Below, in pieces: positions 4,741 through 44,524 of a DNA stretch of 64,000 bases. The number at the start of each line of letters is the position of its first letter. Position 1 is the first letter of the stretch. Under the pieces are notes generated by a model, which saw only the letters and a list, made by a program, of their open reading frames with translations, had not been told where the DNA came from and made no database searches. Source of the DNA: Octopus bimaculoides (Eukaryota); the NCBI RefSeq assembly GCF_001194135.2, contig NC_068988.1, forward strand, positions 44,088,260 to 44,152,259, in the 5' to 3' direction. A program made the translations under genes and the position numbers.

Positions 4741-5267
4741 CTGACATCAAGAGAAGACAGTAGACAAATATTATTACAACCATTAACTGTCAAACATCCA
4801 TGGTTGTTTTTTTTGTATTGTGTTTTTTGTTTAAACTATAACATTTAAGGTTTTCAAGTGGATTTCACTGAAATTATACATGAAAGAAAAACTGAAATAT
4901 TGAATAACAAGAAAAACTGAAATAAGAAAGTTTTGACTAAACTATAACCCATACATATTGTTTGAGAGAAATATATAACCTATGAATAAATTATGACAAA
5001 ATGGTTTTAACAACAATAACAATTATATTACTCATAGAAACACAAATATAAATTAAAATAATCTTTATGTATGCGTGTGACTGTTTATATCTATATGTGT
5101 GTGTGTGTACATCAAGACACACACATTTCCATATATGAATATGTATGTAAGAGTATAAATATTCTTTTTAGTTTGTGGATAACTAAAAAATAGAAGTGAG
5201 TTCATCCCATTAGCACATATTCATAAAAACAACAAAGAAATATTTAACTGTAAGCTATGCATATATC

Positions 5268-5314
<47 letters not shown>

Positions 5315-5760
5315 TATATACAAGCACACACACACACACACTATATAGTATTAGTAAGTTTGATGTAAGTAAAACAAAACAAACACAAAAACATAAAAAT
5401 GCAGTACCCCAGTATGGTCACAGCTCATTGTCTGAAACCAGTAAAAGAGTAAAAGGAACTAAGAAACTGGAATGCATCATGTTATGCTGATTACTTTGAA
5501 GAGTTTAGATAAAAGAATTAGGTAAATAAAATAAAGATGAAGCAGTATGAATTCTAAGTGATAATATAATATCAGTTATCATACGGAAGTGCAGATTTGT
5601 AACGGTAGGAATGGGTATTATAAAGGAAACATGGTTTGCGCTCAATATAATAACTACTAGAGAAAGGTAAAGTTGATATGTGAAGGGATCAAACATAGAA
5701 TAATAGAAGGCTGGATCAAAATACAGTCAGGCAATTTAGTTTAGAGCACTATTGTATTCC

Positions 5761-5982
5761 ATAATAATTCTTTCTACTAAAGGCACAAGGCCTGAAATTT
5801 TGTGGGAAAGGACAAGTCGATTACATCAACCCCAGTGTTTCACTGGTACTTATTTTATCGACCCCAAAAGGACGAAAGGCAAAGTCGACCATGGCAGAAT
5901 TTGAACTCAGAACATATGGACAGATAAAATGCCGCCAAGCATTTCGTCCAGCATGCTAACGATTCTGCTAGCTCACTGCCTT
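5761..5982 (-). mobile_element. tRNA-derived SINE, family 1 (Meta-domain-like core)
   Basis: Minus-strand head ggcagtgagctagcagaatcgttagc with B-box gagttcaaattc, core gtcgactttgcctttcgtccttttggggtcgataaaataagtacc; more than 10 in-window copies (about 6230, 6460, 14310, 19860, 22070, 23620, 25061, 27191, 27905, 28700, 38400, 46060). Confidence 0.8.
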
Positions 5983-8900
5983 ATTGTTTTCCATAATAAT
6001 GATATCATAAACTGGTGCAGGGTCATATACTGTAGGAGGCAGGGGTAATGCAGTCAATATAATCAATCAAAATACATGCCTAGTACTTAAGGATGGAGGC
6101 AAAGTTGAGCATGGTTGAAATGTAACACTAGATAGAACTAAAAGTAAGAAACCTTTTAATCAGGTACCCTGCCATCTACACCATTCTCTATCTTGTTTTC
6201 ATAATGTTAGTAATCTTTTTTAGATTAGGCAGATGGCCAGCAATTTGTTGCATGTATATGTTGGGGTAAGTTGATTTAATCAACTCTAGTACTTGGCTGG
6301 TAATTTATTTAACCAGCCATAAAAAAAGGATCAAAAGCAAAGTTGCCTTTACAGGAATTTGAACTATGAACATAAGGAGCTGGGACAAATACTGCAAGGC
6401 ATTTTGTCTGCTGCTCTAATAATTATGCCAATCTACCACTCTTAATAATTTTTGACAAAGTCAAAGCCAAAAATTTGGGCAGAGGAGAACAATTGATCTC
6501 AGTACTTGTGTGGGAAGATGAAAGGCAAAGCTAACATCAGTAAGATTTGAACACAGGATGTTAACAGCTAGAATAGATACTGCAAAGCATTTTGTCTGAT
6601 ACTGTAACAGTTCTGCCAATATTACAAATAAGGATTTAGGGTCAAGGCCTTAGATTTTAGAGCCGAAAATAGAACTAAATTAGCCTCAAAAGGCAGAATG
6701 ATATAGTTTAGCTTCAGTGGGGATTTGAATTAGAATGTAGTTAAATACTAAAGATGATTCTTCCTAACATGGGATTGTGTTTGCCAACCAATAATAAAAA
6801 TAAAAACAGTGGTTTCTTATACAGGCATGAAAACCTGGGACTTTTATAGAAGAGGAAAAATGTTGTAGCATTCATGTTTTATCCAAAGTCATTAATCAGG
6901 TAAATGATGCAGTTGGAATATTTGAAATCAGGCCAATAATATTAATTGGCTTTCAATTAAAACATAATTCCCTAAATTAATTGAGAGGGCGAGAAAGGAA
7001 ATATGTGATAAAATAATGCCCCATTATTATAAAATGCAACAATGTGTCTATTTGAAAAAGCAAAAATATACTTGTCTGGGAAGATCTTAGAGAAATCATG
7101 TGTCCAGCTTAGAGTTGGAAGATTAGGAATTCTGAAAGCATGCTTCCAATGGTTGACACTGGAATAATCCCAAACAAGAGGGAAAATGCATGCCAAAAAC
7201 ATACTGAATGTTGGCAAATTCTTTTATATATTTATTTTATGTTGTTACTGATGAACATTAATATTATTGCTTACAGATTCTCAGCAAGTCAATCCTTGAT
7301 TTGCGTTTTTTTCTGCTAGCAAGAATAACAAGGAACTGTCTGTGTAAATTGATGCAGACTTAGTTCAAAAGCACTAGTCTATCAGTTTTTCTTGCTAATG
7401 ATCTCATTTTTTGTCAATATATACCAACAAAAGATATACAGACACACACAACAGTCTTCGACAAAGTTACTGTCTATCAAATTCCATGTGTGAGGAGGCA
7501 TTGGTCAACCAGATGCTACATTAGAGAATAATTGCCCAAAATGCATAGGTAACCTGTATACCAAGAACACCTGATACACACATATCTCTTCCTCTCTTTA
7601 TCCCACCCAAAGCCTTTGCACAAATCACTTTCTTCCAATCCTCCTGCTACAAAATATCAACCTACAAGGATTTACTCCCCACTCATGTCTTTCTTGGCAA
7701 CAATCAACTCAGCAGATGTTTATGCTGAGCATCAACTCTCTTGCTCTCACCAATTTTGGAGGGCATGAAGAAGCCAGATATTGCCCCTTCTGCAGAAGCT
7801 ATATGTAAAATCCTCCATGCAATTCCTTTGACTTTTACAATCTTTGTCACCATATGTTGTAAGTAGCAAGTAAGTAAACCAGTTTGTAATGTCCTGCATC
7901 AAACTGTTTGTGAAGTTATTCCAACTTTCATGATGCTGTGGTTGGGAGATAATAACATTCGGCAGGTTAACAACATTAGTCTCTCACAGGTTTTTACCTG
8001 TGGTAAGATTTAAATTCATCAGTAAATACAGTTATTACTCCATTCCTAGTAATGTAAATAAAACAATAGTATTTCTGTTAAGAGATTGTCTATCTAATTA
8101 CAAATGTAGAGATGATGGTAAAGGTGGTTAGTTACATACCAATTAGTTTATAAGGACATTGAATGAAGTCCAAGTATTCACACAGAGAATTCAGTGAGAA
8201 ATAATACTGGAATGGTTTCCCATTATTCTCTCTAGGTCCACAAGAATACTTAGTACAATTTTACAACAATGAACTATATTACTCTGTAGTATTTACTTCA
8301 GACTAGGTAATGCCAGCAGGTAAATGTCTTAGCCAGGGACACAAAGTAGTACTGCTAACAGAAAATGTACTTCATAGATCTCTTGGATAGTTTAAAAAAC
8401 AAAAACAAAAAAAAAACCTATGAATGACTTTGGGAAGTAGAAGTAGCATCATGTCCTTTGTAGGTTATCACAGATTGATAGAACTGATGTGGCTAATGCC
8501 TGAAAGCATCTGCAGGTCTCTGTCTTCAGGAAACAACACTCAGGCAAGGAGAGAACTGAGTGAGGCTCTAGTTTGAATTCTTGCAGCTGAGTGAACTTTG
8601 CTAAAAGCACACAAAGATCATGTGGAAGTGCTAAAGTGGGAAAATAATTGAAACCAGTAGAAGAAAAAAACTTACAAGCTTTATCGCCCAGTTGTTCAAT
8701 ATTTTATCCTTGCCCTCAAGCAATCAAAAGAAAACATTTGTTATGCTAATTTCTCACCTGATATTTATGCACAAAAAAGATTATTTATTTACACAGTTGC
8801 TATGGAGATATAATTTAAATTTCTTTGATATAAAAAAAAAAAAAATCATGGAACAACATAATGCAAAATTTTCCAAGCCATGTGATGCAGAAATGAAGAA

Positions 8901-10507
8901 GTTGAAGTGTGCATTTTGTTAAAAGAAATCACACAGTTAAGAGTTAAGGTAGGAGTAATTAATTCTTGTTAATAGAGGCCGTTTTGTTAAGAGTAAAGCA
9001 CACACAACAAACCAGAATGTATTTCTCACTGTTGTAGCAGATGTGAGAGTATGTATGAAGAGAACAAGAATACATTAGGGTATCATGTGCATTGTTACAT
9101 ATAAAAAAAAGGTATGGATCTATTTTCTTAGATATTAAATATGGAAAAGCAATTCTGTTCAAAGAGGCAATGTTGATAGTTGCTCACTTAGAGCACTTAG
9201 AGACAATAGTTCCGTTATATGATCCTTGTAATCAAACACTTAAACAGTTAAAATGCTCATGACACAGTTTCATGAAGCAAATTATCACAGGGTCATTCCC
9301 AGCATTCAATAAAAACACTAAAATTGATCAAAAATGCATTTTCTTTAAAATCTAAAGAATCAGCTTCTACACCTGGCTCTGCTACCAAACTTATTAAAAC
9401 TTAAAATAAACAGCAGGGAAAAAGATGTCAGGCAAAAGATAGATCACTACGAGAGAGAACATATACAGACTCACAGAGATGATTCTAATTAAACAGGTGG
9501 TGGGCATCTAGAAAATATATCTTGTAATACCACTGACCATTATGACTGCAATCTGAACTAATAAGGGAATAACTATTGTTTCACCCAACCTGCTTGTTTT
9601 AACAGTTAAATTACCCTCAAATACTCTCTACAATCTTCAAACTAGGATCCACACGTAACAACCTTAAAATCGAATCCAGAATATGCCCGAAACATAAAAG
9701 AAAAGGGCTTCAGCAAGAATGCCAATCAAAGGATGTGAACCTGTTTATTAATTAGCAATCAATGGTATTAAAGGATTTCACCACATATCACAACAATATT
9801 TCGGTGTATATAACAGGAATAGTTATAATACCTAGAATCCATTGGGCAATAGCAGCATAACTGATAAATAGTTACTCTTCATGGAGTGTATCTAGAACAA
9901 GGCAAGTAGACAAAGTTCATTGCAAGGAAGAATTAAACTCTGTATTTCAAGCTATGACACAGATGAATTTTTTCAAGATGGCCTCTGAGAGGTTGCTTGG
10001 CCTATTATGCTTCTATTTAAAGTTTATTCAACTCAGTATTATCTGTCAGCATACTTCTTGGTTTTCCCCTTTCCTTTTGCTTTCTATTAAAAATTTCTGT
10101 AAATTATTTTATCTAAGTGTCCAAAATATTTTAGTTTTTTCTCTTTGATGGTGTCCATGCTTAGTTTTTGCCATTGTTAGTACTTCATCATTTGTTGTCT
10201 TCTGGATACTCCTCAAAAATTAACATCTGAATTGTGAGAGAATAGAGTCAAAGTCTGGGGGTCATTTCCAAAATTTATATCCTAATATCCTTTCCCCCAG
10301 GAATGCAATGCATAAATCAACATCTTATGAACTTTAAAATACCAGCTCAAAGCATAAACTTCATCATGCAACAATGTTATTCAACATACACTATTGATTT
10401 CTATATGAATGAATGTTTATCTGATACTTCTGAATCTTATAATTAAGTAAAAGCAGATTTGCTAAACTGAAATTGTGTTATTAACAGCATGATGCAACAA
10501 TCATTAC

Positions 10508-10573
10508 CCCAGCTTGCCAGTAAGACCAGGTCAGGATAACTGAGGTCAGCCGGATATCTATCTTTGAAATCTG
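10508..10573 (-). CDS. DOCK7: Candidate 63/66-nt cassette exon ((Q)ISKIDIRLTSVILTWSYWQAG)
   Basis: Long pyrimidine tract, NAGNAG acceptor (catcag/cag), donor GGG|gtaatg; phase 0->0, open. Confidence 0.4.
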
Positions 10574-11344
10574 CTGATGAAGACCTTCACAGGAAAGCCG
10601 AGAAGCAAGAGAAATGAAAGACATCAAAACCACTGGATATTCATTTCCAGTGAGCAGGTGTCATCATACAACTATTGCAACAATATAAAGAAATTAGGTG
10701 ATAACAGACTGATATGCAGACATGTTACTGGTGCCTGTGTATCATCACAATACACATATTTTGATGTCCTTACCTAATTAATTGGATTCAAACATAAGTA
10801 GAATGACACATTTGGAGAATAGGAATAGTTAATTCTTATAGTTAATTAAAGCTTCATTACCAGATTGGTACTTTATTTTACTGACAGTTGAGGGATAAAA
10901 GATAGAGTGGATCTCAACAGGATTTTAATGCAGAGCATAGACGGAAGACATAACAGTCACAAGGTAAATTGTCTGATGCTCTGCTGATTTTGCTAATCCA
11001 CTGAATAGCCTATGGAATTAACAGTGACCAATGGAAGTAACAAGGAAATAGAGGGATAATAGCTAAATCAAACCTAATTCTCGCAAATGCTTTAAAATGT
11101 AGAAAACAGCATGTAGCATTTTTAAGAGTGGTTAGTAAAATTTTCTTGTAGCTGTTAAATTTTTTTTTCAAACAAAGCCAAAACTAAATAAATAAAAATC
11201 AAAATTTCAAAGTAAAAAACCAGAGAAACCAGTCCAAATACCAAGCGAACAAACCCAACACAGGCAATGCTCAAGGCACAAATTCTTTTTGGAAAAAGAA
11301 AAAAAGAAAATCTGCGCGTGCTAAACAAAATTTGATGACTTTAC

Positions 11345-11416
11345 CAAGAGCACATTCAAAGATGTCGCAGATGTTGGTCTTGGCGGGCGGAATGGTAAGA
11401 TGTTGTCAAGGGTTAT
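11345..11416 (-). CDS. DOCK7: Candidate 72-nt cassette exon (ITLDNILPFRPPRPTSATSLNVLL)
   Basis: aaactatag|ATA...TTG|gtaaag; phase 0->0, open, CpG-containing island. Confidence 0.5.
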
Positions 11417-11841
11417 CTATAGTTTAGACCCAACATGAGAGTAAAAAAACAAAAAAAACAAAAGATGAAATGATGGTATAAATCAAAGAAAATATAAGCA
11501 AAAATTTTTTTAATAATTTCAGAAAAAATTTCCAAATAATCCATAATATCCTGTGTACAAGGGACATAGTATACATGGATAAACATAATGCAAATCTACT
11601 AGAGGAGGGTACAATGCTGCAAAACCAATTTAAACATTGTCACTTGTTTGGGACTATGTAAAATGAAACTGGTGAATTGTCATGCAGACAAATTCTTTAA
11701 AATAAAATTCTACATACCTTGTTCTGACTATTGTAGAAATAAAGACAAATCAAATATTGAGGAAAGATTAGGTTTATGCCTATAGCTAATAAACTAGAGT
11801 TGTTAGTAGATAATTAGCTAGTATGTATGTATTGATGAAAA

Positions 11842-11904
<63 letters not shown>

Positions 11905-14219
11905 TTGGGATTTCAGGATATGAAGGATGTGGTATGTTGCTTTGTGAGGAATTGGAGGAAACAAGGAAATTTGATCTAATTAAATGTCTATGAAAGAGAG
12001 AGGGATGGAGGGAATGAAAGGCCTGAATTAGAAGGAAATACATGAGTTTCATACAGAGGTAAGAAATTTCTATATGAAGAATGTGGTTCAGTTAAGGTTT
12101 TATATCAAAATGGAATAACTACAGGAAAAGACAAACGAAAATTGGTTTTGTTTGCAAAAGAGGAAAATTTTAAATACTTCTAAATGTATATCAAATGCCC
12201 AAATTTTGATGTGAAAATAATGACAAGATTTTATATGATTTTTTTTTAGATGTAGAGCATAGTTGAGTCAACTCCAGAATATAACTAGTATTTAAAGGTC
12301 ATAAGTGAATTAATGCAGAATCAGTTCCCGATATGATTTAAAATCAGAATGCAAGTTAACAAAATTAGCTGTCATGCATCTAGTTTGGTGCTCTGCTTCA
12401 TTAGTCTTTATCGTTTATATTGGACATATAAATATATTGTAAAAACTCAAACTAACCAATTAATTTGAAATACTTTTTTAGATAAAGTATTTAATACAAA
12501 TACCTTTATTAACTTACAGGTTTCAGTCACTGAAATGTGATCATACCTTCAAATAGTTAGGTTGACCTCAATACATATTTCAGTCAGGTAATTATTTTTA
12601 TCAATATCTGTTTATTGAAGGCTAAGCTATTTATTTTAACATAAAAGAATCCAACTCAACACACCAACAAACATAAATACATACATACATAGATCTTATT
12701 CCCACACTAATTTTGTACTATTGAGTGTACACACTAGTGTATTTGAAGTAAGATAATGTTAAACTGTCATCTGTCATACATCAGAAAGGAGACTTAAAGG
12801 AAATTCTAAATGAAAAGTTTGAGCATGTTTCAGCAAGTGAAAATTAGCCAAACATTTCTATCTAGAAATTGGGATAGGACAGTGGATAATGTAAAGCATC
12901 ACTGAAAGGCAGAGTTTGCTTTCGATCCACTTTTAAATGTCTGTGCCTTATCAATATCAAACACTGCACATGGAATATAAGTGGCCTCTTCTTTATCTTT
13001 GATTTCTAAATTTCTTTTGAAAGTTTATATGGTACAGCCCACCATACAACAAATACGTAGGAAAAAAAAAACAAAAAAAAAACAGCAATTCAAAAACAAA
13101 TCCATTGTTATTTTAATGATCATCTTTACTTATTCTATGGATGAAATGGCTTTTGAAATTTCAAGTATTAGTATGTTGTTAGATCAAGCATGTTACAGCA
13201 CAATGTCTTTAATGCTAACAACTTAACCATAGAATGGGAGTGCAATCTGTTGTCAGTAATCAAAATGATGTACCCTTTCCAGGAACTCAACACATTTGCT
13301 GAAGTAATACTAAGATGTGAAATTATAACTGCATTAATTATTATAATTTTATTATCTTAACTTCTACTTTACATCAACTTTATTGTTTGGGATAGTTTCC
13401 ATTCCAAAATGTTTGTATATTTGTGTTGTTAATATTTTCATAAATATTATGTATTTTGTGGGAATTAGGATGGGGGAATAGTATAGAGAAAATAGCCATT
13501 AAAAAATTTTATCAATTAACTAATTTATATCAGTATCATTAAGAGAATGTGATATTACTGACAATAACAATATCCCGGAAAAATATTAGATTTTGCTAAA
13601 AGATTTCTTAGATATTTAAGATATTTAGATTTTAAAAAATGTCTTTGAATAATGCATTCCAGTGTTGCAAAGGTAAAAAAAAACAAAAATAAATTAAAAA
13701 AACAACTATAACTTTTACGTAAATGATGATAAACTGAAGCAGACAATGTAGGACTAAATGATTTTACATAAAAACATTAAACAAAGATAAGTTATTTGCA
13801 TAAACGTAATGGAGAGAGAAATTATTTGCATAACCAAATGACCACATTAAATTTTTTTTAAAACAAAAGAACAAAATTAAAACAATACTACATACATAAA
13901 TAATTAAGTTACACTTAAACACAAAATAAACAAAATGAATATTTTTAGATTCTGAACAAAATTATACAAGATTATCATTGTTTTTAAAATTTAATATTTT
14001 TTTAAGTATAACAATTAAATATTTTAAGATTAATATAAAAAAAAAACATAAACTAAAATTATAACAATAAAAAAAATAAAGCATTAAATAAATTATAACT
14101 ATGTAATATTTTTAAAAATACAATTAAAAACTCAATGCACCTATATATTTTAACAAAAATAGTGATTAAAATTCGAAAAATTTGTAATTTTTAGTAGGTA
14201 AGAAAAATGTAGACATAAC

Positions 14220-14252
<33 letters not shown>

Positions 14253-16225: not shown

Positions 16226-16273
<48 letters not shown>

Positions 16274-17957: not shown

Positions 17958-17999
<42 letters not shown>

Positions 18000-33475: not shown

Positions 33476-34215
33476 CTGCAAAGATGGAATTTTGAAGAAC
33501 AATGAGAATAGATAAGACTGACACATCTAAATTATGTTATGCAGATACTTGTGTGTGTGCGTGTGTATGTGCATGCATGTGTGTGTGTGTTTCGGTCTTT
33601 TTGGTGACTGATTCTGCAAACAGACTCTCACTAAAATGATTTAATACAATATTAAATTTTAAATAGTGTTCTACTAATTTCTTTCTTTTTCTTTAGATAC
33701 ATACATACCACTGACATATATGCATGCTGTTTTAGTGGAGTAGAAAGGGGCAAGTGGAATAGGGTGCTTTGGCAAACAGTGTGGCATATATGTGTTACCT
33801 GAGGGTCAAAATATATCTATATCCACTTCAAAATATATCTATAAACCCTATTTTGGGGGGATTGAGTATTTTTTATTGTGTTTGTAAACACAAAATGTTT
33901 TTATGTGTGTGCATGTGTAAGGGAGATTTTGCTGCTACTTCTACCAAGTTGAATGACCACACAGAGGTTTTCTAATTGATTGTGATATATCATTTAAATC
34001 AATACTGCATAGTATTAACATGTCTTGCCATAGTTGTTTCACTTTTTGTCTTCTCTAACTAATTCTATCCAGTTAGATATAGCTCTGTTGGAGTCCTGCT
34101 TTATTTAATCCATTTCTAAATGAAGATATTACTTTTAAACAATATTATAACTCTATAATATTTAAATTACGATAAAGGTAAGCAAAATTTTGCTTTTAGA
34201 AGCACTTAGATATAT

Positions 34216-34634
34216 TGAAAGGTACAGATAAGGAAATAATTTATTCTCAAATGCAGCATAATGCTGATAGAATAGCAAGAACAGGATAAAATATCCATAT
34301 TTGGTGGAAAAATTTTGTCAGCAGCCAGCCATGACACTCAAACTCACATCCCTGAGTACCAGTCAAGTGCTTTACCATTAAGCTAAATGGCCCACTGACA
34401 AATTAATCTGCAATTTTTGAACTTATAAATCTAGCTCTATAAGACACTGTATGTTAAATTCAAATTATGATAAATGCAAACAAAGTTTGCTTTTAGAAGT
34501 GCTGAGATGTATTGAAAGATACAGATAAAGAAATGATTTATTCTCAAATGTAGAATAATGCTGATAGAACAGTAGGGACAGGATAAAATATCCATATTTT
34601 GCAGAAAAAATTGTCCGTGATTAGTGGTCAAGTG

Positions 34635-34665
<31 letters not shown>

Positions 34666-35059
34666 CTACAAAATATGAATATTTTATACTGTTCCTGCTG
34701 TTCTGTCAGCATTATTCTATGTCCAAGAATAAATCATTTCTTTATCTGTATCTTTCAATACATCTCAGTGCTTCTAAAAGCAAACTTTGCTTGTTTACAT
34801 TTATCATAATTTGAATTTAACATACAGCATCTTATAAAACTAGATTTATAATTTTAAAAATTGCAGATTAATTTGTCAGTGGGCAGTTCAGCTTAGTGGT
34901 AAAACACTTGACCAGTAATCACAGGGATATGAGTTCGAATCTCATGGTAGGCCGCTGACAAATCTTCCTGCAAAATATGGATATTTTATCCTGTTCCTGC
35001 TGTTCTATCAGCATTATTCTATGTTCGAGAATAGATTATTTCCTTATCTGTATCTTTCA
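34216..35059. repeat. ~840-bp imperfect palindrome (arms 34216-34604 and 34666-35059) around a spacer with a T30 run
   Basis: Arms read as reverse complements (roughly 85-90% by eye); built from a ~297-bp tandem unit. Confidence 0.85.
34880..34953 (+). pseudogene. tRNA-like (Thr-like) degenerate sequence inside the palindrome arm
   Basis: A-box AGCTTAGTGGTAAAAC, loop CC-AGT-AA, B-box GAGTTCGAATCTC; mirror copy at 34322-34394 (-) has stem CTTGA/TCAGG with loop CT-GGT-AC. Confidence 0.45.
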
Positions 35060-35554
35060 CTATAATATTTCTAAAGGTGAGGAGAGGAAAGGACAACAAT
35101 TTCAGGATTAGTGTTTGTGTTTTTATAGTGAACTTCAAGAATCTGCATTACATAATGGATTTGTTAAGAATTATTTTACTAAATAAATGTGTATGAAAAT
35201 ATGTAATTCTACAATTTAACTTTCAGGTTTTCATTAAACAGTTTTGAAATGGACCAAAACTTTGGTTCTGAAATGGAATTTTAAAACACTTGATTGTCTT
35301 GGAAATAAAGATGAAAATATGATTATGTTTAAAGATTTATATTTTTCATAACCATGAAATAATGATTCTAAACACATTGCAAATGATCAAAGCTATTCCA
35401 AACAGTAGCATGCAGGGTGTTCCTGTTTCTATCTGAGAAACACAAGAGATCAGATACCATGAGAGAGAGAAAGAGAGAGAGAAAGAAAGAGAGATCAAAA
35501 TGTAGCAGAGGTGATGGTGGACTACATTCAGGTTTTGTAGAGAGAGAGAAAGAG

Positions 35555-35585
<31 letters not shown>

Positions 35586-35602
35586 TTGAGTGAGACACAA
35601 AC

Positions 35603-35641
35603 CTTGAGAGGAGTGGTAGCCTGCTCGAGAATGAAGCTTCC
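35603..35641 (-). CDS. DOCK7: Candidate 39-nt cassette exon (GSFILEQATTPLK)
   Basis: ctaatactttccag|GGA...AAG|gtttgt; phase 0->0, GC-rich island, branch-like ctaat. Confidence 0.4.
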
Positions 35642-35795
35642 CTGGAAAGTATTAGGTCAATGTTTAAATCAGACCGTAATGTATAGTCACAATGGAACAA
35701 CAAGATAACGAGAAGATGGTCTAAGACAAGCAGTGAACCAAATGTTCCAACAATAACCAATCTTTTCTTCCTCAGATATAATTGATTCTGCCTAC

Positions 35796-35828
35796 CTCAT
35801 ACAGAATTTTAACATGCAATGCAGAAAT
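35796..35828 (-). CDS. DOCK7: Candidate 33-nt cassette exon (ISALHVKILYE)
   Basis: ggttttcatag|...GAG|gtaggc; phase 0->0, no stop. Confidence 0.25.
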
Positions 35829-36945
35829 CTATGAAAACCACACACATAGACATACCTAGAGACAGAGGCACACATACATACTCAATAAAAGTTCTTTAAA
35901 CATCTTTAAAACTGAACAGAAAAAATCCTTGCAGGAGTGAATACCATAACCAGTTATCTGAAGCATGAAAGAACATGCTTGTGCGTAACCGGAACAGTGG
36001 TCTGTATGTAACTTTTTACTATCATTCAATGATCAGTATTAACTTGGATGGAAATGTTCCATTTGTCAAAACTTAACATTTGAATATTGTTCTGATGTTA
36101 CAGTAAGAGCTGTTGTTCTTGCTATTGCGTAGTTCCAAGGTGCACTCCATATCTGACGGACATGTCATCAAATAAATTCTAGTTTTGACCATGCTGTCTT
36201 CAGTTAGATAAAAGTATATCTATGACTGCATTATCCAAAGTAGTTTACCTTTTTATTTTTAAGATGGCAAGGCCTGATACCAAATGAGATTTGAATGATA
36301 TCAACTATAAAATCTCTGAATGTAAGTAAATGGACAGCAAAAGAAGTAATGTGTGTGATATCATGATGGTTTCACTGTAGCAGTTGTTGGTTAGCCCCTG
36401 ATCAGCTCGGATCAAGCAAACTTATGATCAAAGCAGTGACCATACTGTCTTTTTCAGCTTTTTTAAACACGTGTAACAAGGACATTACCCAATGTGTCCT
36501 TCCAAAATGCTTAAAGACAGCATGATGTGATTTCAGTGAGATTTAGCTGCTATCTCTAGGTGGTTGGGTCATCACATAGAGACTCTGACATTAGTGTATT
36601 ACAACTATGCTTTTCTTTTTTAAATGCTTCCAACAGGTGATCTTTTTATAGCTGGATGCTGTTTTAATTGCATGGAAAGTGGCAGGTAGAATATCATGCT
36701 TTGTCTATAGGAGGTGACAGTGCAATGGGTGTAGCAAGATTTAAGCAATCACCAGGTAGACAGCAATTTATGAATTTGATTTCAAAAGCATTACAGTTCC
36801 AATTGCATTTAAATAAGCAAATATATAATGATGATAAGGATTGTGATAACATATAAAACATATGAAAGACTTGTGTATATATGTGGAGAATGTGTGCCAT
36901 ATGCAGAAGACATACATATATGTCATCCTCCGTCTCCTTGTTGGT

Positions 36946-37259
36946 GAAGGTGTGTGGCATAGTGGTTGGGGTATTCAGCTCACGATTGTATGGTTGTGAG
37001 TTCAATTCCCGGTGACACGTTATGTCCTTGAGCAAGACACTTTATTTCACATTGCTCCAGTCCACTCAGCTGGGAAAAATGATTAGTACCCGTATTTCAA
37101 AAGGCCAGCTGTGTCACATTCTGTGTCATGCTGAATCTCTCTAAGAACCACATTAAGGGTACATGTGTCTGTCGAGTGCCATATTCATGTTAATTTCACA
37201 AGCAGGCTGTTCCATTCATCGGATCAGCTGGAACCCTCATCGTAACTGATAGGGTGCCA
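36946..37259 (+). mobile_element. tRNA-derived CORE-like SINE, family 2
   Basis: A-box tggcatagtgg, B-box gagttcaattcc, core tgtccttgagcaagacactttatttcac; antisense copy at 62275-62543. Confidence 0.8.
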
Positions 37260-37403
37260 GTTACTTCTTGTCATCATCACTATTTTCTCCATTTCTCCAT
37301 GCTGGGATGCATGAATTGTATAGTTCTATTTCAGTACTGGAACAAGATTTCAGTTCTGGTCATAGTCTTTCAATACGAAAATATGTATACAGGTTATCTT
37401 TTG

Positions 37404-37408
<5 letters not shown>

Positions 37409-37461
<53 letters not shown>
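37409..37461. repeat. (CT)n microsatellite, representative of many (TA)n, (TG)n, (GA)n, (AAT)n and (GAT)n tracts
   Basis: Direct reading; others at about 1030-1180, 5270-5340, 11843-11900, 16228-16268, 25015-25062, 47078-47141. Confidence 0.95.
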
Positions 37462-37484
<23 letters not shown>

Positions 37485-37671
37485 GTTTCATCTAATGTAA
37501 GTCCTATGTGAGCAATTCTTGGAAATGCATGTCACAGACAGATGTATCTAAAAGGAAGATTGTAAAATAGACAAGTTGCAACATTCAGGCTGTTCCTATT
37601 TAACTGAAATCGTCTGAACTAAGAGTATGAAAGCCGGTTTATGGCTTTAAATCATCAAGGACTTTACTTAC

Positions 37672-37683
37672 CAGTGACATAAT
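37672..37683 (-). CDS. DOCK7: Candidate 12-nt microexon (IMSL)
   Basis: tacttttatag|ATTATGTCACTG|gtaagt; phase 0->0, open frame, consensus donor. Confidence 0.4.
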
Positions 37684-40600
37684 CTATAAAAGTACTTCAA
37701 ATTTCTTTACTAATCTTCTAAGAAGCATAAGTAATTATCCAAACATTGCATGAATGACACCAACAGAGACTCTTCAAGACACAAAACAACTATAGAATGA
37801 TTTGAGGCCCATAACTTTTCTAAAACACTATTTAAACACTATTAAGGAGTTGAGATGGAGGGTGAGGAAAAGACCTTAAAAGAAAAACCCAAACAAATGA
37901 AAAACACCTTAAAATTTACATTCTGGCAGATAAAAATGGTGCATGCCTAGAAAACATCAATATCCAGGACATCATACCTTAGAACAGTTTTGAGAGATTG
38001 AAGAACTCGAAATGTCAATACTGCAGAAAATACTGCTAATAATTTTGCACCTAATCACAAGGTCATTTATGGTAAGAAAGAGGGGTGTGATTGACTTTTA
38101 ATTGCAGTATATCACTGGTACGTTTTTTAACCTTTTAGGCAGGAGAGGAAGCAGTGCCCATGGATCTAACAGAGCCTCTAAGACCAGTAAGAGAAAAGAT
38201 ACTCAGTCAGGAGACATGGTCCAAATGCTTGTAACAGAGTGGATTCCGCTAAAGGCACCAAAGACAACATGTGATGGTTTTAAACTGGGAAGATGGAATA
38301 AGACTACCACCCAGATGGGGTAAAGTGAGATTTGAGCTCAGAAAGCCATGAGCCAGAAGAAATACTGAGAAGCATCAAGTTTGACACTTTTCAAGTTCTG
38401 CTAATCCACTACTCTGGATTGGTCTTTTTTTAACCTTGAAAGGATGAAAGACAAAGTTGACCTCAGTGGGATTTGAACTCAGGATATAGAAAGTTGGAAC
38501 AAATACAGGAAGATATTCTGTCCAATGCTCTAATAACTCTGCTAATTCATGTTTATTGAGCCCAATTGATAAAAGTTAAATTTCATGACAGGATATTTAA
38601 ATTTGGAACCAAGTGGGACAGGACAGAATATTGCAATGTATTTAGTCAAGCACTTGGTGAAATATCAAAATATTAGTACCAGTGATATACTTGGAGTTTT
38701 GTTTCAATCAGCTTACACTGCCCTAATAAATATTTGTCTTAGACAAAAACAAATGAAAAAGTCTAGATTCTAACAGAAGAGTGAAGAAAACTTGTTTGTG
38801 GGTACTTAAATGAAAATCCTTGCCTGCAGTAGAGAAAATCTATAAAATATTGGTATCTCATCAGATATTAAAAGAGTGAGAGGAATCTCAAACAAAAAAC
38901 CGAAAGCAAAATGAGAACAAGAGAAAGAAAGATGCATGAGTGGGGTGTGAGAAAAAACTAGAGAAGATACAAATAATTACTCAATGGAAAATAAATGAGA
39001 AAAGGGTTTCCAATAATTTAACAACACTTTCAGTAGACAAAAAACACAATAAGCCAACTTTTGCTTAACAACAAACTGACTGAATGAATGACTTTGCCAC
39101 AATATTTCTTCTAACAGTGAAAGCAACATAGAGAAAAACACAGCCGATATTTTGACAGTACACAGACATACTGATAAACAGCAGAGGTGATAGAGAGTCA
39201 GAAGGATTTAATATTTGAATTTTTTTAATTGAAAATCAAAAGTATTGGGAAAAGTAAATTAAGCAAAAGTAACCAAAATTAAACAAAACAGCAAAGCAAT
39301 CTATATTTGGAAATCATAAAATTAAAAAAAAAAATAATAATTAAAAAAAAAACACAACAAAACAAGTCAAATGTGTAAATGTAAAGATGAAAATGAGGTT
39401 AGTGATGTAAAATAACGTCAAAGGTGTAAAATGAGTCAGTTTCCTAAGTAGAAAAATACACAAAGTCTAGTTAAATTTATTGACTAGTTTGAGCCAAGAA
39501 CAAATCCTCATGAACAGTAAAATAAAACGGTTGCTGCATGGATGATAGAGGGAACAAATATATTACAAAAGGGACCAAAAGAAACCAAACTTTTTTCCTT
39601 GCTGGGAGGAATGATACCAAACTCAGTGATTCCCAGTCACAGTTGAATGGAGTGTCCCACAGTACAAGATATCTGAAAAATATCACAAACACCATATATT
39701 TGCATGTGTATGCATGCCTCTGTGTGTGTGTTAACTTTCTGGAACCCAAGGTTCCATGCTGATGGAAATCAGCATGTATTCAACCATATTCCAATAGAAA
39801 GTATTACTCAATAGGTTTTGCAGTACTGACTATTTGTTCTTTTCATCTCTATAGCTCAAACCTGAAGTAGTTTTGAATATTAAATTTGTACTTAAAGACT
39901 GCTCAATATAGTTAATCCTGTAAGGACTAAAAGAGAATGAAATACAAAACATATCATGGTATCAAGTCTTACACTTCACTGCCTCAGTTAAAATCTTACT
40001 GAGAGTGATCCTGCCTTGAGAGTACCATTTCAATTAAACATATCCCTTCTAAAAGTTAACTTCATGTTTAATTAAGCAAAAAAGGGCAGTAAAGCAAGGG
40101 TAAAGTTTACCACAAGCTAAGACCATGATATGTTTAATTCTTATTGAGGCAATTCCACTTAACTGCTTTATTTAATGCTATTGGGAAAGGTATGAATGAA
40201 ATAATTTGCATTATACTCCCTTTAAAATATAGGGCTCTTCTATCCTATCAAAGAAATATTAGAATTCTGTATGAAGTTAAATTTTTCTAATATAAACTGA
40301 AAGACCATTCTACACCTTGGAGAACTACTAATGATGTAGTATAAAATGAAAAAATGAAAGAAAGAAAATAAAAGAAAGAAAATAAAAGAAAGAAAAACTA
40401 CCAAGAAATTTATGTGTCCTGTATTACATACGGATACACATAAAGTAAAAACGCATACACACACAAAGAAACACAAACACACACAGAAGTATACTTAAGT
40501 TAATTCATTCTTTATAAAAATATATTAGAAGATATTTCAATAAGATGCTGTGGGACCAAGAACTGTCATAAAGTGTAACATTTAATCTTCAGTGATTCCA

Positions 40601-43600
40601 ATCGGTGAATCGTAATATCTGCTTCAGGTTAAAGAGTGTTTCTAAAATGTGAGTTACAAAGATCAAGAGACACTGAGGATTGCAGGAGGTGAATAGCTGA
40701 GAGGGAAGAAGGTATAGCTAGAATTGAAATAAAAATGCTTCATATGGGAGCAATATAAATTTTAAAAGGTGAGGGCTAACGTAGAGGATTGCTTAAACAG
40801 ATCATTTCTTTCTTCATTAAGTGTATTCTTCAGAACTTGTATAATCTACGTGAGTGGATATCAACAATTTTTTACTTCTAAAATGCATGGGTTATAGCAA
40901 ACAGGAATTTTAGAAACACAGGTCTTTTTTTTTGGGGGGGGGGTGTATCAGGAAGGTCTTTAACACAGCTAACTCTGCTATTGATATGAAATGTGCCACT
41001 TTCTATAACAGTTCTTGTCCCATCTAGAACATTTTACTGAAAGAAAAATTCCCCAATTACTAAAAACAAAGCTTAATAACATGTGAGAGAAAAATTCATA
41101 AGAAATTAAGAAAATAATGCAGAAGAATTAGTTAACTTAATTTCAAGATTTAAAGAAAGAAGAGAAAATGGTTGAATCCAAATCAAACAAATGTTAAACT
41201 TTCTCTACACAAACACACATTTATCATTAATAGCTAAATTGAAATTAAAAAGACTTTAAGATCAGCAAAGAATGTTTATGACAGATCAATGCTCTGGCTA
41301 TCAGTAGGTATTACTAAGTTCATAGATTGATTAAATGATTACAATTAAAGAAGAAAAAGAAAAAGAAGAAGAGCAACACAAACTAGACTAAGTTGAAGCC
41401 ACAATTTCAAATACATGCAATGTAAGGCTACAGTTGTTTCAATAGTTACAAAAATATAAATAGATAAATCTCTGAAAATGAAATTCTCAGGTTAATCAAA
41501 TATATTAGCAGACATAATTAGATCAAATTAACATTTAATATTCATAATAGATATATATTGATAGATGGATGGGAGAATATACACTTCTACATTGCTATGT
41601 ATATATGTTTTTGAAAACGAGTTTTACTTTTTAAGTTACAAATTAAAATAATTTCAGTTTAGAAATTTGTGTCATCACCATATAAGCTTCTCAGAGCATC
41701 AAATCCATAACTTTACTTAAATTCCAGATTGGTATTGGGATGTTGTTTTAAGTGCCCAGGATATCAATGAATTCAGAAAGGGAGCCAGGAGAGAGTAGGG
41801 CCTTTGAAATTTGGCCTACTATTATTCAATTACTTGAAGACAAAAGTTTTCATTGGTATTTCAATAATTTGCATTAGAGAAAAAAATTTTCCTTTTAGCT
41901 GAAAGGTCAGAACCAAAACAATATGAAACACTAGTTTCAATAAATTCTATTATAATTCAACTGGACTCACATACTCACAAATCATGAGTTCAAATCCACA
42001 TCTGGTGGTTTGGTATTTCTGCATAGACAGAAAATATGGGAAAGCCTGATAAAGGTCTGCACTGTGATCACAATGGCCACTCTTGTCACACAAAGTTACA
42101 CTGAATCTGCTTGAGGATTTCATTAAGGATACATGTGCCTAACTTACAAGACTAGAATATATGTGCATAACTTATGAGGCTAGAATACAGCCAGTCTGTA
42201 GAATTGATAAAAGAACATCACTTGTATTTGAAAAGATTAGTGGTGGTCAGTATGTTATCAATCTAAAGTTCAGAAAATGTTCTTTATGGGGAGAAAATGT
42301 AAAATTTTCTTTTCTTCTTCCTCACAAGTCACCAGCAGACTTCACTTTACACATACTCTTCAATGATGTAAGCCACCACTTGTGTCTTCAATTCTAGTAA
42401 CTTATTTTAATGCTGTAAAGTACTAATTTATCAGTAAAACATAACTACTTCCTTCTCTTTATGGTGTACCAAATTCATTTTTAAGAAACAAGCTAACATG
42501 ATGCTATATGAAGCAACACATTCCTCTAATCACTTGTGGGTAGACATGCTGTCTCAATACATTGCATCATCTAATCCTTCTGCAGTAACCTCAACTTCTC
42601 AGAGATAGCTGGTCTGTTGCTACCTTCACTCAGACTCATCCAGCAAACTGAGCTCTCTTATATTATGTCCAATGTCCCAGGCCCTGCATTAACTACCACA
42701 ACCAATCTTTCCTTCCCAAAATGTCAGCCCTCTGGAATATCCTCATGGCCCATGGTTCTCCTGTAGTCACTAAATTTCAGTCGTTCAAAAGGAACATTAA
42801 CTGCACAGGCCTCACCAATCTGTGGAGGATTGTAAAAGCCATTGTCATAACCCCTTGTTTCAGATCAAACTATGAAAAAAACAAAAAACAAAAAAAAAAA
42901 ACAACACAGCAATGTAGAAGGTACTTAAACTTTCAAGTAACATGTGCCACAATAGAACTTAAGTTATAATATAGAATATATTAATCATCCATAACTTGAA
43001 CAGAATTCTAAAGGAAAACTAAAACATTCATGTGTATACTATAAGTAACTAAAAAAGAATTTCAATATTTAAGATGACTGTGAATATAGTAAGATTAACT
43101 AACAATAGTGGAAATCTAAACTAAGATAAGATCATTCATGTGTACAATAGAAAGTAATAGAGAAAAGAATGACTAATTACTAATAAATACAGAAACACAA
43201 ACGGGTTAACAAACAGTTGTATTCAAAACCTTGACTGGAAATATTTCTTCAACTAATCTGACTTCTCTGAGAGAAAAAGTTTCTGGTTTTGTAAGATTTA
43301 AGTCCACAGGATTATTGCATGTATTGGATATTTTAGTGAAGATAGTGGGGGGGGGGGGGGGGGGCTTTTGAATAAATCTTTAACCAAAGACATATATACA
43401 TAATAAGCAAAACTATATTCAGGACTGAATACAGATAACCATAACAACTGGTTAACAAATGGCTCACAGCTGTTTATCAGGACTGGATTAGAAATAATCT
43501 GAAATGGACTGTTGTTATTATTGTTATTGTTTATCCTTGAACAGTCCTGATTGAGATGACTAATGGTTGAGAATGATCTGGGAGTAATTACACAAATGGT

Positions 43601-44524
43601 ATTAATGGGGTTCTTTTTAATTAATTCTACTACTGCCATATGATTGTGTGTGTGAATGTGTGTATCCTTGTCTCTCTCTTGATACTGCATGATAATTGTA
43701 AATGAGAGTCACTGTCATCCAAGCAGAGTTGCAGTATGATTCATTTCCAATATTCTACAAATTTAGTATATTGATAATACCCAGAAATTTATGATTTGTA
43801 GTACCAACTAATATCACAGGTATTAATATAAACTCTAACCCACTTATTGTGTGAACTTTTGTCTAAAGTCCTCAACAGAAAACGTATCACATGTTTATAT
43901 GAATATATCTATGTTTGTGTATAATCATTATAATTATATAAAAAGGATAATACGAGCTGCTGCAATAATAATACCTTCTTAACACATGTAATACGTATGT
44001 ACCTATGGGTATGTTTGTACGTATATATATATATATATATAAGACAGGCTTCTTTCAGTTTCCATCAACCAAATCCACTCACAAAGCTTTGCTCAGCCAG
44101 AGACTATAATGGAAGACACTTGCCTAAGGTGCCATGCATTGGGACTGAATCACACACACCTTGTAGCTATTCCATCAACCGGATTCATTATTCTAGCTAT
44201 TATAAGTATCAGAAAAAGAAAAGTTTACAGAAAAGATTTCCAGTCAAGAAGTTATCTAATATTAAAAATAAATTAAGACGAAACGAGATTGGAAAAAAAA
44301 AAAATTAACAAAAATAATTAATGTACTTAATGCAAAATCTTTAAAATCTAATTGCACAGTAAGAAACTAAATTACAGATAACTACTTTCAACAATTTGCT
44401 AATTATTATTCACAAAATGCAGACTACTTAGAATAAAAAGTTACTTGAAGATAAATTTGAAACTAATAATAAGAAGAAGAGTAAAAATAATATGCAAAAC
44501 AACTAAAGAGAAAAAAAAATTTAC

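What the first reader, a model, noticed from the sequence alone, without database searches (positions are those of the whole stretch)
4741..44524. A 39.8-kb DOCK7 intron appears to hide an array of frame-preserving cassette exons and microexons at one junction
Seen: the homologous exons ...FEYK (44525) and GKK... (4740) are 39.8 kb apart, while every other intron here is under about 3 kb. Inside, on the gene strand, are many AG...GT-bounded islands with lengths divisible by 3 and open in phase 0: 12 (IMSL), 33, 39, 12 (TPNE), 243, 36, 72, 63/66, 39 and 39/48 nt. Known: vertebrate DOCK7 reads FEYKGKK contiguously as I recall it, and this lies in the ARM-like region between DHR-1 and DHR-2. Inference: a lineage-specific, combinatorially spliced insert of up to about 200 aa in a Rac/Cdc42 GEF, possibly neural. 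Caveat: I scanned by eye for such pairs, so some will be chance.
Basis: partly seen in the sequence, partly recalled or inferred. Interest (0 to 1): 0.8.

Follow-up and report, generated by a model that had tools for sequence, protein, structure and literature searches.

The report
Three annotated cassette exons in octopus DOCK7

Summary
The window carries residues 644-1561 of O. bimaculoides DOCK7 on the minus strand, matching RefSeq isoform X2 letter for letter. The exon ending ...FEYK (44525) and the exon starting GKK... (4740) are 39,784 nt apart. All other introns here are 0.4-2.3 kb.

The interval is four introns (8.9, 15.0, 8.9 and 6.6 kb) around three cassette exons:
- A: 35641-35603, 39 nt
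- B: 20563-20321, 243 nt
- C: 11416-11345, 72 nt

All three have AG/GT boundaries, are phase 0 and contain no stop codon. All eight on/off combinations occur among the 15 isoforms I could see from O. bimaculoides, O. sinensis and O. vulgaris. The largest insert is 118 aa, not about 200.

Exon B is not cephalopod-specific. It is an alternative insert at the same junction in gastropods, bivalves and a chiton. It is absent from the arthropod and vertebrate DOCK6/7 proteins examined.

The other seven islands have no support. The 12-nt TPNE island has the best splice sites but remains untested.

The assembly gaps are intronic and abut microsatellites.

Verdict: a real but ordinary feature that is already annotated.

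The parts
44525..44701 (-). Constitutive DOCK7 exon (177 nt), TRKCML...VVSNFEYK; its donor lies after 44525
   Evidence: Exact match to residues 1282-1340 of isoform X2. AF2 with an alignment models it as ARM helices at pLDDT about 90.
35642..44524 (-). Intron, 8,883 nt, between the FEYK exon and cassette exon A
   Evidence: Splice boundaries solved against the protein. Holds the unsupported IMSL island.
35603..35641 (-). Cassette exon A, 39 nt, GSFILEQATTPLK; ..ctttccag|GGA...AAG|gtttgt; phase 0-0
   Evidence: Present in O. bimaculoides X5 and X7, O. sinensis X5 and X6, and three O. vulgaris products; absent in others. GC 0.54 against 0.32 for the interval.
20564..35602 (-). Intron, 15,039 nt as assembled, between exons A and B; contains gap 22908-22964
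   Evidence: The gap abuts a (TA)n array. Holds the unsupported TPNE island and a tRNA-like repeat cluster.
20321..20563 (-). Cassette exon B, 243 nt, 81 aa, AKWVLMNCDML...GKEESYGQ; ..ttctag|GCA...CAG|gtacta; phase 0-0
   Evidence: Residues 1341-1421 of isoform X2. Included or skipped in Octopus isoforms and present in Argonauta. Homologous alternative insert in gastropods, bivalves and a chiton. phmmer against 1.84 billion representatives found only exon-B-like sequences. No Pfam family.
11417..20320 (-). Intron, 8,904 nt as assembled, between exons B and C; contains gaps 18000-18221 and 18464-18488
   Evidence: The gaps abut (AT)n and (AG)n arrays.
11345..11416 (-). Cassette exon C, 72 nt, 24 aa, ITLDNILPFRPPRPTSATSLNVLL; ..ctatag|ATA...TTG|gtaaag; phase 0-0; weak splice sites
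   Evidence: Residues 1422-1445 of isoform X2. Included or skipped independently of A and B. One substitution (T to A) in O. sinensis and O. vulgaris. PWM rank 797 of 1529.
4741..11344 (-). Intron, 6,604 nt, between exon C and the GKK exon
   Evidence: Rich in SINE-like repeats.
4593..4740 (-). Constitutive DOCK7 exon (148 nt), GKKAMSQYSQQTFRRSVDMKTRLEEAILG...
   Evidence: Residues 1446-1494 of isoform X2. Aligns to human DOCK6 residues about 1307-1349.
33464..33475 (-). Candidate 12-nt microexon TPNE (..ccatctttgcag|ACTCCCAATGAG|gtaagc). Unsupported.
   Evidence: Best combined splice-site score of all 1529 sense islands, with a TGC directly before the AG. Not in any of the 15 isoforms seen. 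One antisense island scores higher.
37672..37683 (-). Candidate 12-nt microexon IMSL (..acttttatag|ATTATGTCACTG|gtaagt). Unsupported.
   Evidence: Rank 14 of 1529; good donor, weak acceptor. Not in any isoform seen.
18000..18221 (.). Assembly gap (222 N), intronic
   Evidence: Preceded by (AT)20 at 17960-17999.
18464..18488 (.). Assembly gap (25 N), intronic
   Evidence: Preceded by (AG)20 at 18423-18463.
22908..22964 (.). Assembly gap (57 N), intronic
   Evidence: Embedded in a TA/TG-rich microsatellite at 22784-22900, with ATATAT... on the far side.

Best explanation
The interval 4741-44524 is not one intron. It is an alternative-splicing hotspot of the Octopus bimaculoides DOCK7 gene (minus strand), made of four long, repeat-filled introns around three cassette exons: A (39 nt), B (243 nt) and C (72 nt).

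Shown:
- Each exon is phase 0-0 and free of stop codons. Any subset can therefore be included without changing the downstream frame, adding 0-118 residues between ...SNFEYK and GKKAMSQ....
- Exon B is an old molluscan alternative exon.
- A and C were seen only in Octopus.

Inferred:
- The insert lands directly after a confidently modelled ARM-domain helix, at the start of a flexible segment. It is predicted to be mostly disordered. One short motif, HEQ(I/L)WEGIQRKSxD(F/L), is conserved and weakly helical.
- The exons most likely tune a regulatory or docking surface of the ARM domain, through phosphorylation, partner binding or oligomer equilibrium, rather than the catalytic DHR-2 domain.
- The model for this is the neighbouring disordered segment of human DOCK6, which carries the Akt site Ser1194.

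The remaining AG...GT islands, including the 12-nt IMSL and TPNE, are best read as chance until transcripts show otherwise.
For: Gene identity and exon structure:
- The window encodes residues 644-1561 of XP_052826042.1 (O. bimaculoides DOCK7 isoform X2) exactly, exon by exon, with GT-AG at every junction.

Inclusion and skipping:
- Fifteen isoforms from O. bimaculoides, O. sinensis, O. vulgaris and Argonauta hians show none, A, B, C, A+B, A+C, B+C and A+B+C at this junction, and nothing else.
- Within the window's part of the protein this is the only variable site.
- The alternative forms in the O. vulgaris models come from PASA updates using Iso-Seq and RNA-seq (PMC10700109). Those models contain A alone, B alone and C alone.

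Conservation of exon B:
- Long isoforms of Haliotis, Gigantopelta, Littorina, Aplysia, Biomphalaria, Physella, Bradybaena, Ruditapes, Mya, Sinanodonta, Crassostrea, Pinctada and the chiton Liolophura carry a homologous insert at the same junction. Motifs AKW, SEETLEDW and WEGIQRKSQDF are conserved.
- Short isoforms of related species read FEY(K/R)GKK.
- Exon B is as conserved as the whole protein: 96% against 95% between O. vulgaris and Argonauta (exon B is identical in O. bimaculoides and O. vulgaris); 58% against 65% between O. bimaculoides and Haliotis.

Composition and splice sites:
- Exons A, B and C have GC 0.47-0.54 against 0.32 for the interval.
- Their splice sites are weaker than those of the 15 constitutive exons, as expected for cassette exons.

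Structure:
- In the AF2 model built with a 31-sequence alignment, the FEYK helix has pLDDT about 90. Insert residues 101-205 fall below 50, apart from a low-confidence helix over HEQIWEGIQRKSQDL.
- Human DOCK6 residues 1185-1242, just upstream of the equivalent exon, are disordered. They carry Ser1194, whose phosphorylation shifts the dimer-tetramer equilibrium (PMC13503879).
Against: - I saw no read-level or long-read evidence. Inclusion rests on public gene models, and some RefSeq combinations may be model extrapolations.
- Only 15 of the 45 members of the isoform cluster could be listed, so further annotated exons cannot be excluded.
- The functional part (disordered regulatory insert) rests on a mediocre model (mean pLDDT 57.8) and on analogy with DOCK6. 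It is not tested.
- Tissue specificity is unknown.
- A and C have no support outside the genus Octopus. The one Argonauta isoform I saw has B only.
Confidence: 0.88

Rival explanations
1. Beyond A, B and C, the interval holds further unannotated cassette exons and neural microexons, such as TPNE (12 nt), IMSL (12 nt) and the 33-, 36- and 63/66-nt islands. This would give a larger combinatorial array.
For: - TPNE has the best combined acceptor and donor score of all 1529 sense islands. It has a pyrimidine-rich tract, a TGC directly before the AG and a GTAAGC donor.
- IMSL ranks 14th, next to the real exon A at 17th.
- Annotation pipelines often miss 12-nt exons (general knowledge).
- Vertebrate DOCK7 has a conserved 15-nt neural microexon (PMC7935315, PMC12626424).
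Against: - None of the 15 isoforms from four species contains anything but A, B and C at this junction.
- A search built to catch transcript fragments with these junctions found nothing.
- Islands of this kind are at chance frequency.
- With constitutive-grade splice scores there are 4 islands (3 distinct acceptors) on the sense strand and 1 on the antisense strand, and the antisense one outscores TPNE.
- Real exon C ranks 797 of 1529, so splice score does not discriminate in either direction.
- Several best candidates for the 63/66- and 39-nt islands lie inside SINE-like repeats at 6358-6637.
Confidence: 0.15
2. The interval is a plain long intron. The isoforms with inserts are annotation noise, meaning cryptic or TE-derived exons picked up from unspliced or aberrant transcripts and without function.
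For: - The introns are full of SINE-like repeats and microsatellites.
- Exon C has very poor splice sites.
- A and C are known only from one genus.
Against: - Exon B is conserved at the same junction across four molluscan classes, at a level similar to the rest of the protein.
- A is identical and C differs by one residue in three Octopus species annotated by two different pipelines.
- All three exons preserve the frame and are GC-rich islands.
- None of the three falls in any repeat family reported by the scan, which showed the 20 largest of 22 families.
Confidence: 0.04
3. The 39.8-kb distance is an assembly artefact. The gaps hide misjoins, so the exons on either side are not truly collinear in one gene.
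For: Three N runs lie in the interval. Gap lengths are only estimates.
Against: - The exon order across the gaps equals the order in proteins from independent assemblies of O. sinensis and O. vulgaris.
- The gaps sit in microsatellites.
- The orthologous genes are also very long: 244 kb in O. vulgaris and 161 kb in Argonauta hians.
Confidence: 0.02

Closest known systems
Annotated DOCK7 isoforms of Octopus bimaculoides (XP_052826042.1, XP_052826045.1, XP_052826047.1), O. sinensis (XP_029640058.1, XP_036361504.1, XP_036361506.1) and O. vulgaris (CAI9727155-CAI9727166)
   Same: These are the same exons. A, B and C map letter for letter to the window and are included or skipped in these models.
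   Different: Nothing differs. The finding rediscovers them from raw sequence. The seven additional islands are not in these models.
Long and short DOCK7-like isoforms of other molluscs (Haliotis rufescens X1, Aplysia californica X1, Crassostrea virginica X2, Ruditapes philippinarum X2, Liolophura sinensis X2 and others)
   Same: An alternative insert homologous to exon B sits at the identical FEY(K/R)|GKK junction, with conserved AKW, SEETLEDW and WEGIQRKSQDF motifs.
   Different: Insert length ranges from 58 to 129 aa, with variable Gly/Ser-rich middles. No counterpart of exon A or C was seen. Argopecten irradians X2 has an unrelated 13-aa insert at the same junction.
Vertebrate DOCK7 alternative exons: ESRP2-repressed exon 23 (PMC6788855) and the conserved 15-nt neural microexon HsaEX0020638 (PMC7935315, PMC12626424)
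   Same: Same gene family. These are frame-preserving alternative exons outside the catalytic core and are regulated by tissue-specific splicing factors.
   Different: I could not establish where these lie relative to the FEYK|GKK junction. All vertebrate DOCK6/7-like proteins examined read FEYKGKK with no insert, so they are not the same exons.
Disordered regulatory segment of human DOCK6 (residues 1185-1242, Akt site Ser1194; PMC13503879)
   Same: A flexible, Ser-rich segment of the ARM domain some 60-120 residues upstream of the same junction. It changes GEF activity through the oligomer equilibrium. It is the best available model for how a disordered ARM insert could act.
   Different: It is constitutive sequence, not an alternative exon, and is not homologous to A, B or C. 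No phosphorylation of the octopus insert is known.
Neural microexon in the DHR-2 domain of Drosophila spg and vertebrate DOCK3/4 (bioRxiv 10.64898/2026.09.05.749416)
   Same: A DOCK-family GEF with lineage-specific, recurrently evolved alternative exons. That study includes O. bimaculoides tissue RNA-seq.
   Different: It concerns a different DOCK subfamily, domain and exon size.

Membership tests
DOCK-C subfamily GEF gene (DOCK6/7/8, Zir) | DOCK_C-D_N domain, DOCK-C2 (DHR-1) domain and three-lobed DHR-2 domain, in that order | tested here: met
   Pfam on isoform X2 gives PF11878 at 50-157, PF14429 at 576-753, PF06920 at 1739-1898, PF20422 at 1962-2037 and PF20421 at 2073-2172. The window encodes residues 644-1561 of that protein exactly.
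DOCK-C subfamily GEF gene (DOCK6/7/8, Zir) | Orthology of the junction-flanking exons to vertebrate DOCK6/7 | tested here: met
   phmmer against PDB: human DOCK6 residues 1249-1349, E = 2e-26, FEYKGKK contiguous. 436 DOCK6/7 hits at E <= 1e-10.
Frame-preserving cassette exon | Canonical AG acceptor and GT donor | tested here: met
   A: ccag|...|gtttgt. B: ctag|...|gtacta. C: atag|...|gtaaag.
Frame-preserving cassette exon | Length divisible by 3, no in-frame stop, and same phase at both ends, so that skipping or inclusion keeps the frame | tested here: met
   39, 243 and 72 nt. The spliced translations equal the annotated proteins in every combination.
Frame-preserving cassette exon | Both inclusion and skipping forms exist in mRNA | tested here: met
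   Met at the level of public gene models: all 8 combinations among 15 isoforms. The O. vulgaris models are built with Iso-Seq and RNA-seq through PASA. Read-level counts cannot be obtained with these tools.
Frame-preserving cassette exon | Evolutionary conservation of the exon | tested here: met
   B is found in four molluscan classes. A and C are conserved among three Octopus species only. Conservation at the DNA level could not be tested.
Neural microexon (3-27 nt, SRRM3/4 eMIC-dependent), for the IMSL and TPNE islands | Inclusion in transcripts | tested here: not met
   Absent from the 15 isoforms listed. The fragment search found nothing. This is weak negative evidence, because 30 cluster members were not seen and no reads were available.
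Neural microexon (3-27 nt, SRRM3/4 eMIC-dependent), for the IMSL and TPNE islands | Length of 27 nt or less, a strong 5' splice site, and a UGC motif close to the 3' splice site | tested here: inconclusive
   TPNE: 12 nt...ctttgcag| with TGC at -5 to -3, donor gtaagc, rank 1 of 1529. IMSL: no TGC and a weak acceptor. One antisense island scores higher than TPNE.
Neural microexon (3-27 nt, SRRM3/4 eMIC-dependent), for the IMSL and TPNE islands | Neural-specific inclusion and cross-species conservation | not testable with these tools
   No RNA-seq was available.

The most novel reading that the evidence does not exclude
Two readings are not excluded.

1. The junction may be an even denser splicing module than annotated. 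At least one unannotated 12-nt microexon (TPNE at 33475-33464, which has the best splice sites in the interval and a TGC-AG acceptor of the kind used by SRRM3/4-dependent microexons) may be spliced in between A and B in neurons.
2. The mollusc-wide exon B may be a phospho-regulated switch on the ARM domain that shifts DOCK7 between auto-inhibited oligomers and active dimers, as Ser1194 does in human DOCK6.
Probability: 0.15. Interest if true: 0.4.

Novelty: already known. Interest (0 to 1): 0.2.

Why it matters
There is little here for genome biology. Cassette exons in a long, repeat-rich part of a large signalling gene are ordinary, and these three are already in RefSeq and ENA models.

Two modest points are worth keeping:
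1. The FEYK|GKK junction of DOCK-C GEFs is an alternative-splicing hotspot conserved across molluscs. It carries an 81-aa exon with a strongly conserved WEGIQRKSQDF motif of unknown function. I found no paper that mentions it. It sits close to the ARM-domain segment now known to control DOCK6 oligomerisation.
2. As a check on the first-stage method, a by-eye search for AG...GT open islands recovered all three real exons, but its stated criterion is at chance level. Such lists need homology or transcript support before they mean anything.

Tried and rejected
I then padded a plain-letter query by repeating the window's own exon translations, only to pass the length filter. Only residues 1-170, the junction, were scored.
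- Search with the insert region of O. sinensis X5: few hits because of the word index, but it added Littorina and the chiton.
- phmmer of exon B against 1.84 billion representatives: 14 hits. All but two were exon-B-like short genomic ORFs or a known mollusc DOCK7. No vertebrate or arthropod relative appeared.
- Search for transcript-sized fragments with a hypothetical all-inclusive junction (IMSL+A+TPNE+B+C): no hit.
- A second listing of the isoform cluster returned the same 15 members, so 30 remain unseen. I considered exact look-ups of hypothetical microexon-bearing isoforms and dropped the idea as low-yield.
- Orthologous loci for cross-species intron comparison: the O. vulgaris and Argonauta genes are on record but no DNA was returned, because their ranges are 244 kb and 161 kb.
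I therefore could not fetch the rest of the gene, enlarge the splice-site training set or count repeat copies in the genome.
- A splice-site PWM from 15 constitutive exons does not separate real from chance islands, since exon C ranks 797 of 1529.
- Single-sequence AF2 was uninformative, with mean pLDDT 40.6.
- Pfam on ten long intronic ORFs found no nested gene.
- Supplements of the octopus tissue-splicing preprint are not held.


Full report
**What the window is.**
- The minus strand carries part of a DOCK-C family gene.
- A protein search with the junction region returned XP_052826042.1, DOCK7 isoform X2 of Octopus bimaculoides, at 96% identity.
- Exact matching shows that the window encodes its residues 644-1561 letter for letter, in 16 constitutive exons plus two alternative ones, every junction being GT-AG.
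- The window is G000:C8:44088260-44152259 of a 2.34-Gb assembly.
- Pfam places DOCK-C2/DHR-1 at residues 576-753 and DHR-2 lobe A at 1739-1898.

**The observation.**
- The exon ...VVSNFEYK ends at 44525 (|gtaaat). The exon GKKAMSQ... begins at 4740 (tgtcag|). They are 39,784 nt apart.
- The other 14 introns of the window measure 435-2275 nt.
- Human DOCK6 (PDB 9vm2) reads ...AAFEYKGKKAFERINS... without interruption. So do about 75 vertebrate DOCK6/7-like proteins and many invertebrate ones.
- These parts of the observation are confirmed.

**What is inside.**
- Isoform X2 does not read FEYKGKK. It has 105 extra residues between the two exons.
- Listing the 90%-identity cluster gave 15 of its 45 members: O. 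bimaculoides X2, X5 and X7; O. sinensis X4, X5 and X6; eight O. vulgaris products; and one Argonauta hians isoform.
- At this junction they contain only three modules:

| Module | Sequence | Size | Window coordinates |
|---|---|---|---|
| A | GSFILEQATTPLK | 13 aa | 35641-35603 |
| B | AKWVLMNC...KEESYGQ | 81 aa | 20563-20321 |
| C | ITLDNILPFRPPRPTSATSLNVLL | 24 aa | 11416-11345 |

- The combinations seen are none, A, B, C, A+B, A+C, B+C and A+B+C, which is all eight.
- Each module has an AG acceptor and a GT donor, is phase 0 at both ends and has no stop codon.
- The "intron" is therefore four introns of 8,883, 15,039, 8,904 and 6,604 nt.
- Within the part of the protein encoded by the window, this junction is the only place where the 15 isoforms differ.
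- The alternative forms in the O. vulgaris annotation were added by PASA from Iso-Seq and RNA-seq. That annotation averages 1.36 transcripts per gene (PMC10700109), yet DOCK7 has at least 12 products, including A alone, B alone and C alone.

**Chance control.**
It gives 1529 islands of 9-300 nt on the gene strand of the interval, 1645 on the opposite strand and about 1290 ± 75 in first-order Markov simulations.
- Stop-free stretches of at least 75 codons number 62 in the interval, mostly low-complexity.
- The criterion has no discriminating power.
- I built a splice-site weight matrix from the 15 constitutive acceptors and donors of the window.
  - It scores the real cassette exons poorly. Acceptor/donor scores are 1.9/9.2 for A, 4.7/3.5 for B and -3.4/-0.2 for C, against 6.6-13.7 and 5.9-11.5 for constitutive sites.
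  - Ranks among the 1529 islands: TPNE (33475-33464) first, IMSL (37683-37672) 14th, A 17th, B 48th, C 797th.
  - At constitutive-grade thresholds there are 4 sense islands (3 distinct acceptors) and 1 antisense island. The antisense one, next to a (CT)n array, outscores TPNE.
- Splice-site quality therefore neither validates TPNE and IMSL nor would it have found exon C.
- What does separate A, B and C from background is homology, annotation and composition: GC 0.54, 0.50 and 0.47 against 0.32 for the interval.

**Assembly gaps.**
- The three N runs lie in the A-B intron (22908-22964) and the B-C intron (18000-18221 and 18464-18488).
- Each directly follows or sits within a microsatellite: (AT)20, (AG)20 or a TA-rich array.
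- No exon is split by a gap, so frame continuity across the gaps is not at issue.
- Collinearity across the gaps is supported by the same exon order in proteins from independent assemblies of O. sinensis and O. vulgaris.
- It is also supported by the great length of the orthologous genes: 244 kb in O. vulgaris and 161 kb in Argonauta hians.
- The intron lengths are estimates.

**How old the exons are.**
- Long isoforms in other molluscs carry a homologue of exon B at the same FEY(K/R)|GKK junction. Shorter isoforms of the same or related species lack it.
  - Gastropods: Haliotis, Gigantopelta, Littorina, Aplysia, Biomphalaria, Physella, Bradybaena, Plakobranchus.
  - Bivalves: Ruditapes, Mya, Sinanodonta, Crassostrea, Pinctada.
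  - Chiton: Liolophura.
- The alignment shows conserved AKW, S(E/D)ETLE(D/E)W, a basic Ser-rich stretch (RPKS-x-(T/S)LPKS in most species; RGSTYKGNGMIKSQS in octopus), (E/S)Q(L/I)WEGIQRKS-x-D(F/L) and a terminal Q.
- Exon B is about as conserved as the whole protein: 96% against 95% between O. vulgaris and Argonauta (exon B is identical in O. bimaculoides and O. vulgaris), and 58% against 65% between O. bimaculoides and Haliotis.
- phmmer of exon B against 1.84 billion representative proteins gave 14 hits. Eleven are short ORFs that read through an exon-B-like sequence into an apparent intron, and one is a known mollusc DOCK7. No vertebrate or arthropod relative was found.
- The listed tick, horseshoe-crab, crayfish, lobster and vertebrate proteins read FEYKGKK.
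- Exon B is therefore an old molluscan alternative exon, not a coleoid novelty.
- A and C were seen only in the three Octopus species. The one Argonauta isoform I could see has B only.
- Argopecten irradians X2 carries an unrelated 13-aa insert at the same junction, which suggests this junction tolerates insertions.

**How it probably works (inferred).**
- An AF2 model of a 425-residue fragment, built with a 31-sequence alignment, has mean pLDDT 57.8.
  - The helices of the FEYK exon reach pLDDT about 90, and the helix ends at FEYK.
  - The whole B+C insert (fragment residues 101-205) is below 50.
  - A low-confidence helix lies over HEQIWEGIQRKSQDL, the most conserved motif.
  - The following GKK exon is modelled as a moderate-confidence helix, followed by another low-confidence stretch before confident ARM repeats resume.
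- The single-sequence model was uninformative.
- The insert is hydrophilic and rich in Ser, Thr, Pro and Gly.
- In human DOCK6 the segment 1185-1242 lies just upstream of the equivalent of the FEYK exon. It is disordered, lies on the concave ARM surface and carries Ser1194. Phosphorylation of Ser1194 by Akt favours closed tetramers and lowers activity (PMC13503879).
- By analogy, the cassette exons most likely lengthen a flexible ARM-domain loop. They may add a short conserved binding or helix motif and phosphorylatable serines, tuning partner binding or oligomer equilibrium rather than catalysis.
- None of this was tested. Neural specificity could not be examined.

**What remains open.**
- TPNE and IMSL are formally possible microexons. 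TPNE has a pyrimidine tract, TGC-AG and GTAAGC.
- No isoform seen contains them, and a search aimed at transcript fragments found nothing.
- Vertebrate DOCK7 has a conserved 15-nt neural microexon and an ESRP2-regulated exon 23. I could not place either relative to this junction, and no vertebrate protein examined has an insert there.

**Verdict.**
- The structural observation is right.
- The statistical basis offered for it is not.
- Those three exons are already in public gene models and are of an ordinary kind, so interest is low.
- The mollusc-wide conservation of exon B and its position near a known regulatory segment of DOCK-C GEFs is a small, testable lead.

Noticed in passing
window 45114-45744 (minus strand), in the intron between exons 46744-46435 and 44701-44525: Decayed mariner-type transposase. 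Two adjacent ORFs in different frames; the second matches Pfam Transposase_1 (PF01359, E = 7e-9) and DDE_3. It sits on the same strand as DOCK7.
   Followed up: partly
window 56156-56443 and 57700-57987: A 288-nt direct repeat, 100% identical, 1544 nt apart, flanking the constitutive exon at 57180-57025. It could be a very recent local duplication or an assembly duplication. If real, it could promote deletion or duplication of that exon.
   Followed up: no
window 1-216, 61960-62175 and (inverted) 60801-61003: A 216-nt segment at the very start of the window is 100% identical to 61960-62175. An inverted copy at 94% lies 1 kb away. It is probably a young interspersed repeat. Its ORF has no Pfam match.
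   Followed up: partly
window 34185-35064, with 34326-34392 (minus strand): A cluster of roughly 130-nt direct and inverted repeats (84-90% identity) containing a tRNA-like sequence. It passes Rfam's tRNA threshold (33.2 bits) but ARAGORN does not call it. It is probably a nest of tRNA-derived SINE or MITE copies, about 0.5 kb downstream of exon A.
   Followed up: partly
window 5760-5982, 6358-6637, 14362-14526, 19895-19985, 22156-22247, 23608-23752, 25055-25277, 27184-27338, 27996-28116, 38331-38563: Many diverged copies (61-79% identity) of one or two SINE-like families, often next to (TAA)n or (ATA)n arrays, fill the four long introns. Repeat load is a likely reason these introns are 3-10 times longer than the others.
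   Followed up: partly
cassette exons A, B and C against the 15 constitutive exons of the window: The alternative exons have clearly weaker acceptors and donors than every constitutive exon of the same gene, yet higher GC (0.47-0.54 against 0.43).
   Followed up: yes
related protein P0008 (Argopecten irradians DOCK7-like X2): The scallop has a different 13-aa insert (KKQVKVYSVHSAK) at the same FEYK|GKK junction. It is not homologous to A, B or C. This points to recurrent use of the junction for alternative exons.
   Followed up: no
isoforms P0121-P0133, outside the window: The other variable sites of octopus DOCK7 are two or three alternative N-terminal first exons, an insert of about 10 aa near residue 425 (O. 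sinensis) and an alternative C-terminal end.
   Followed up: no
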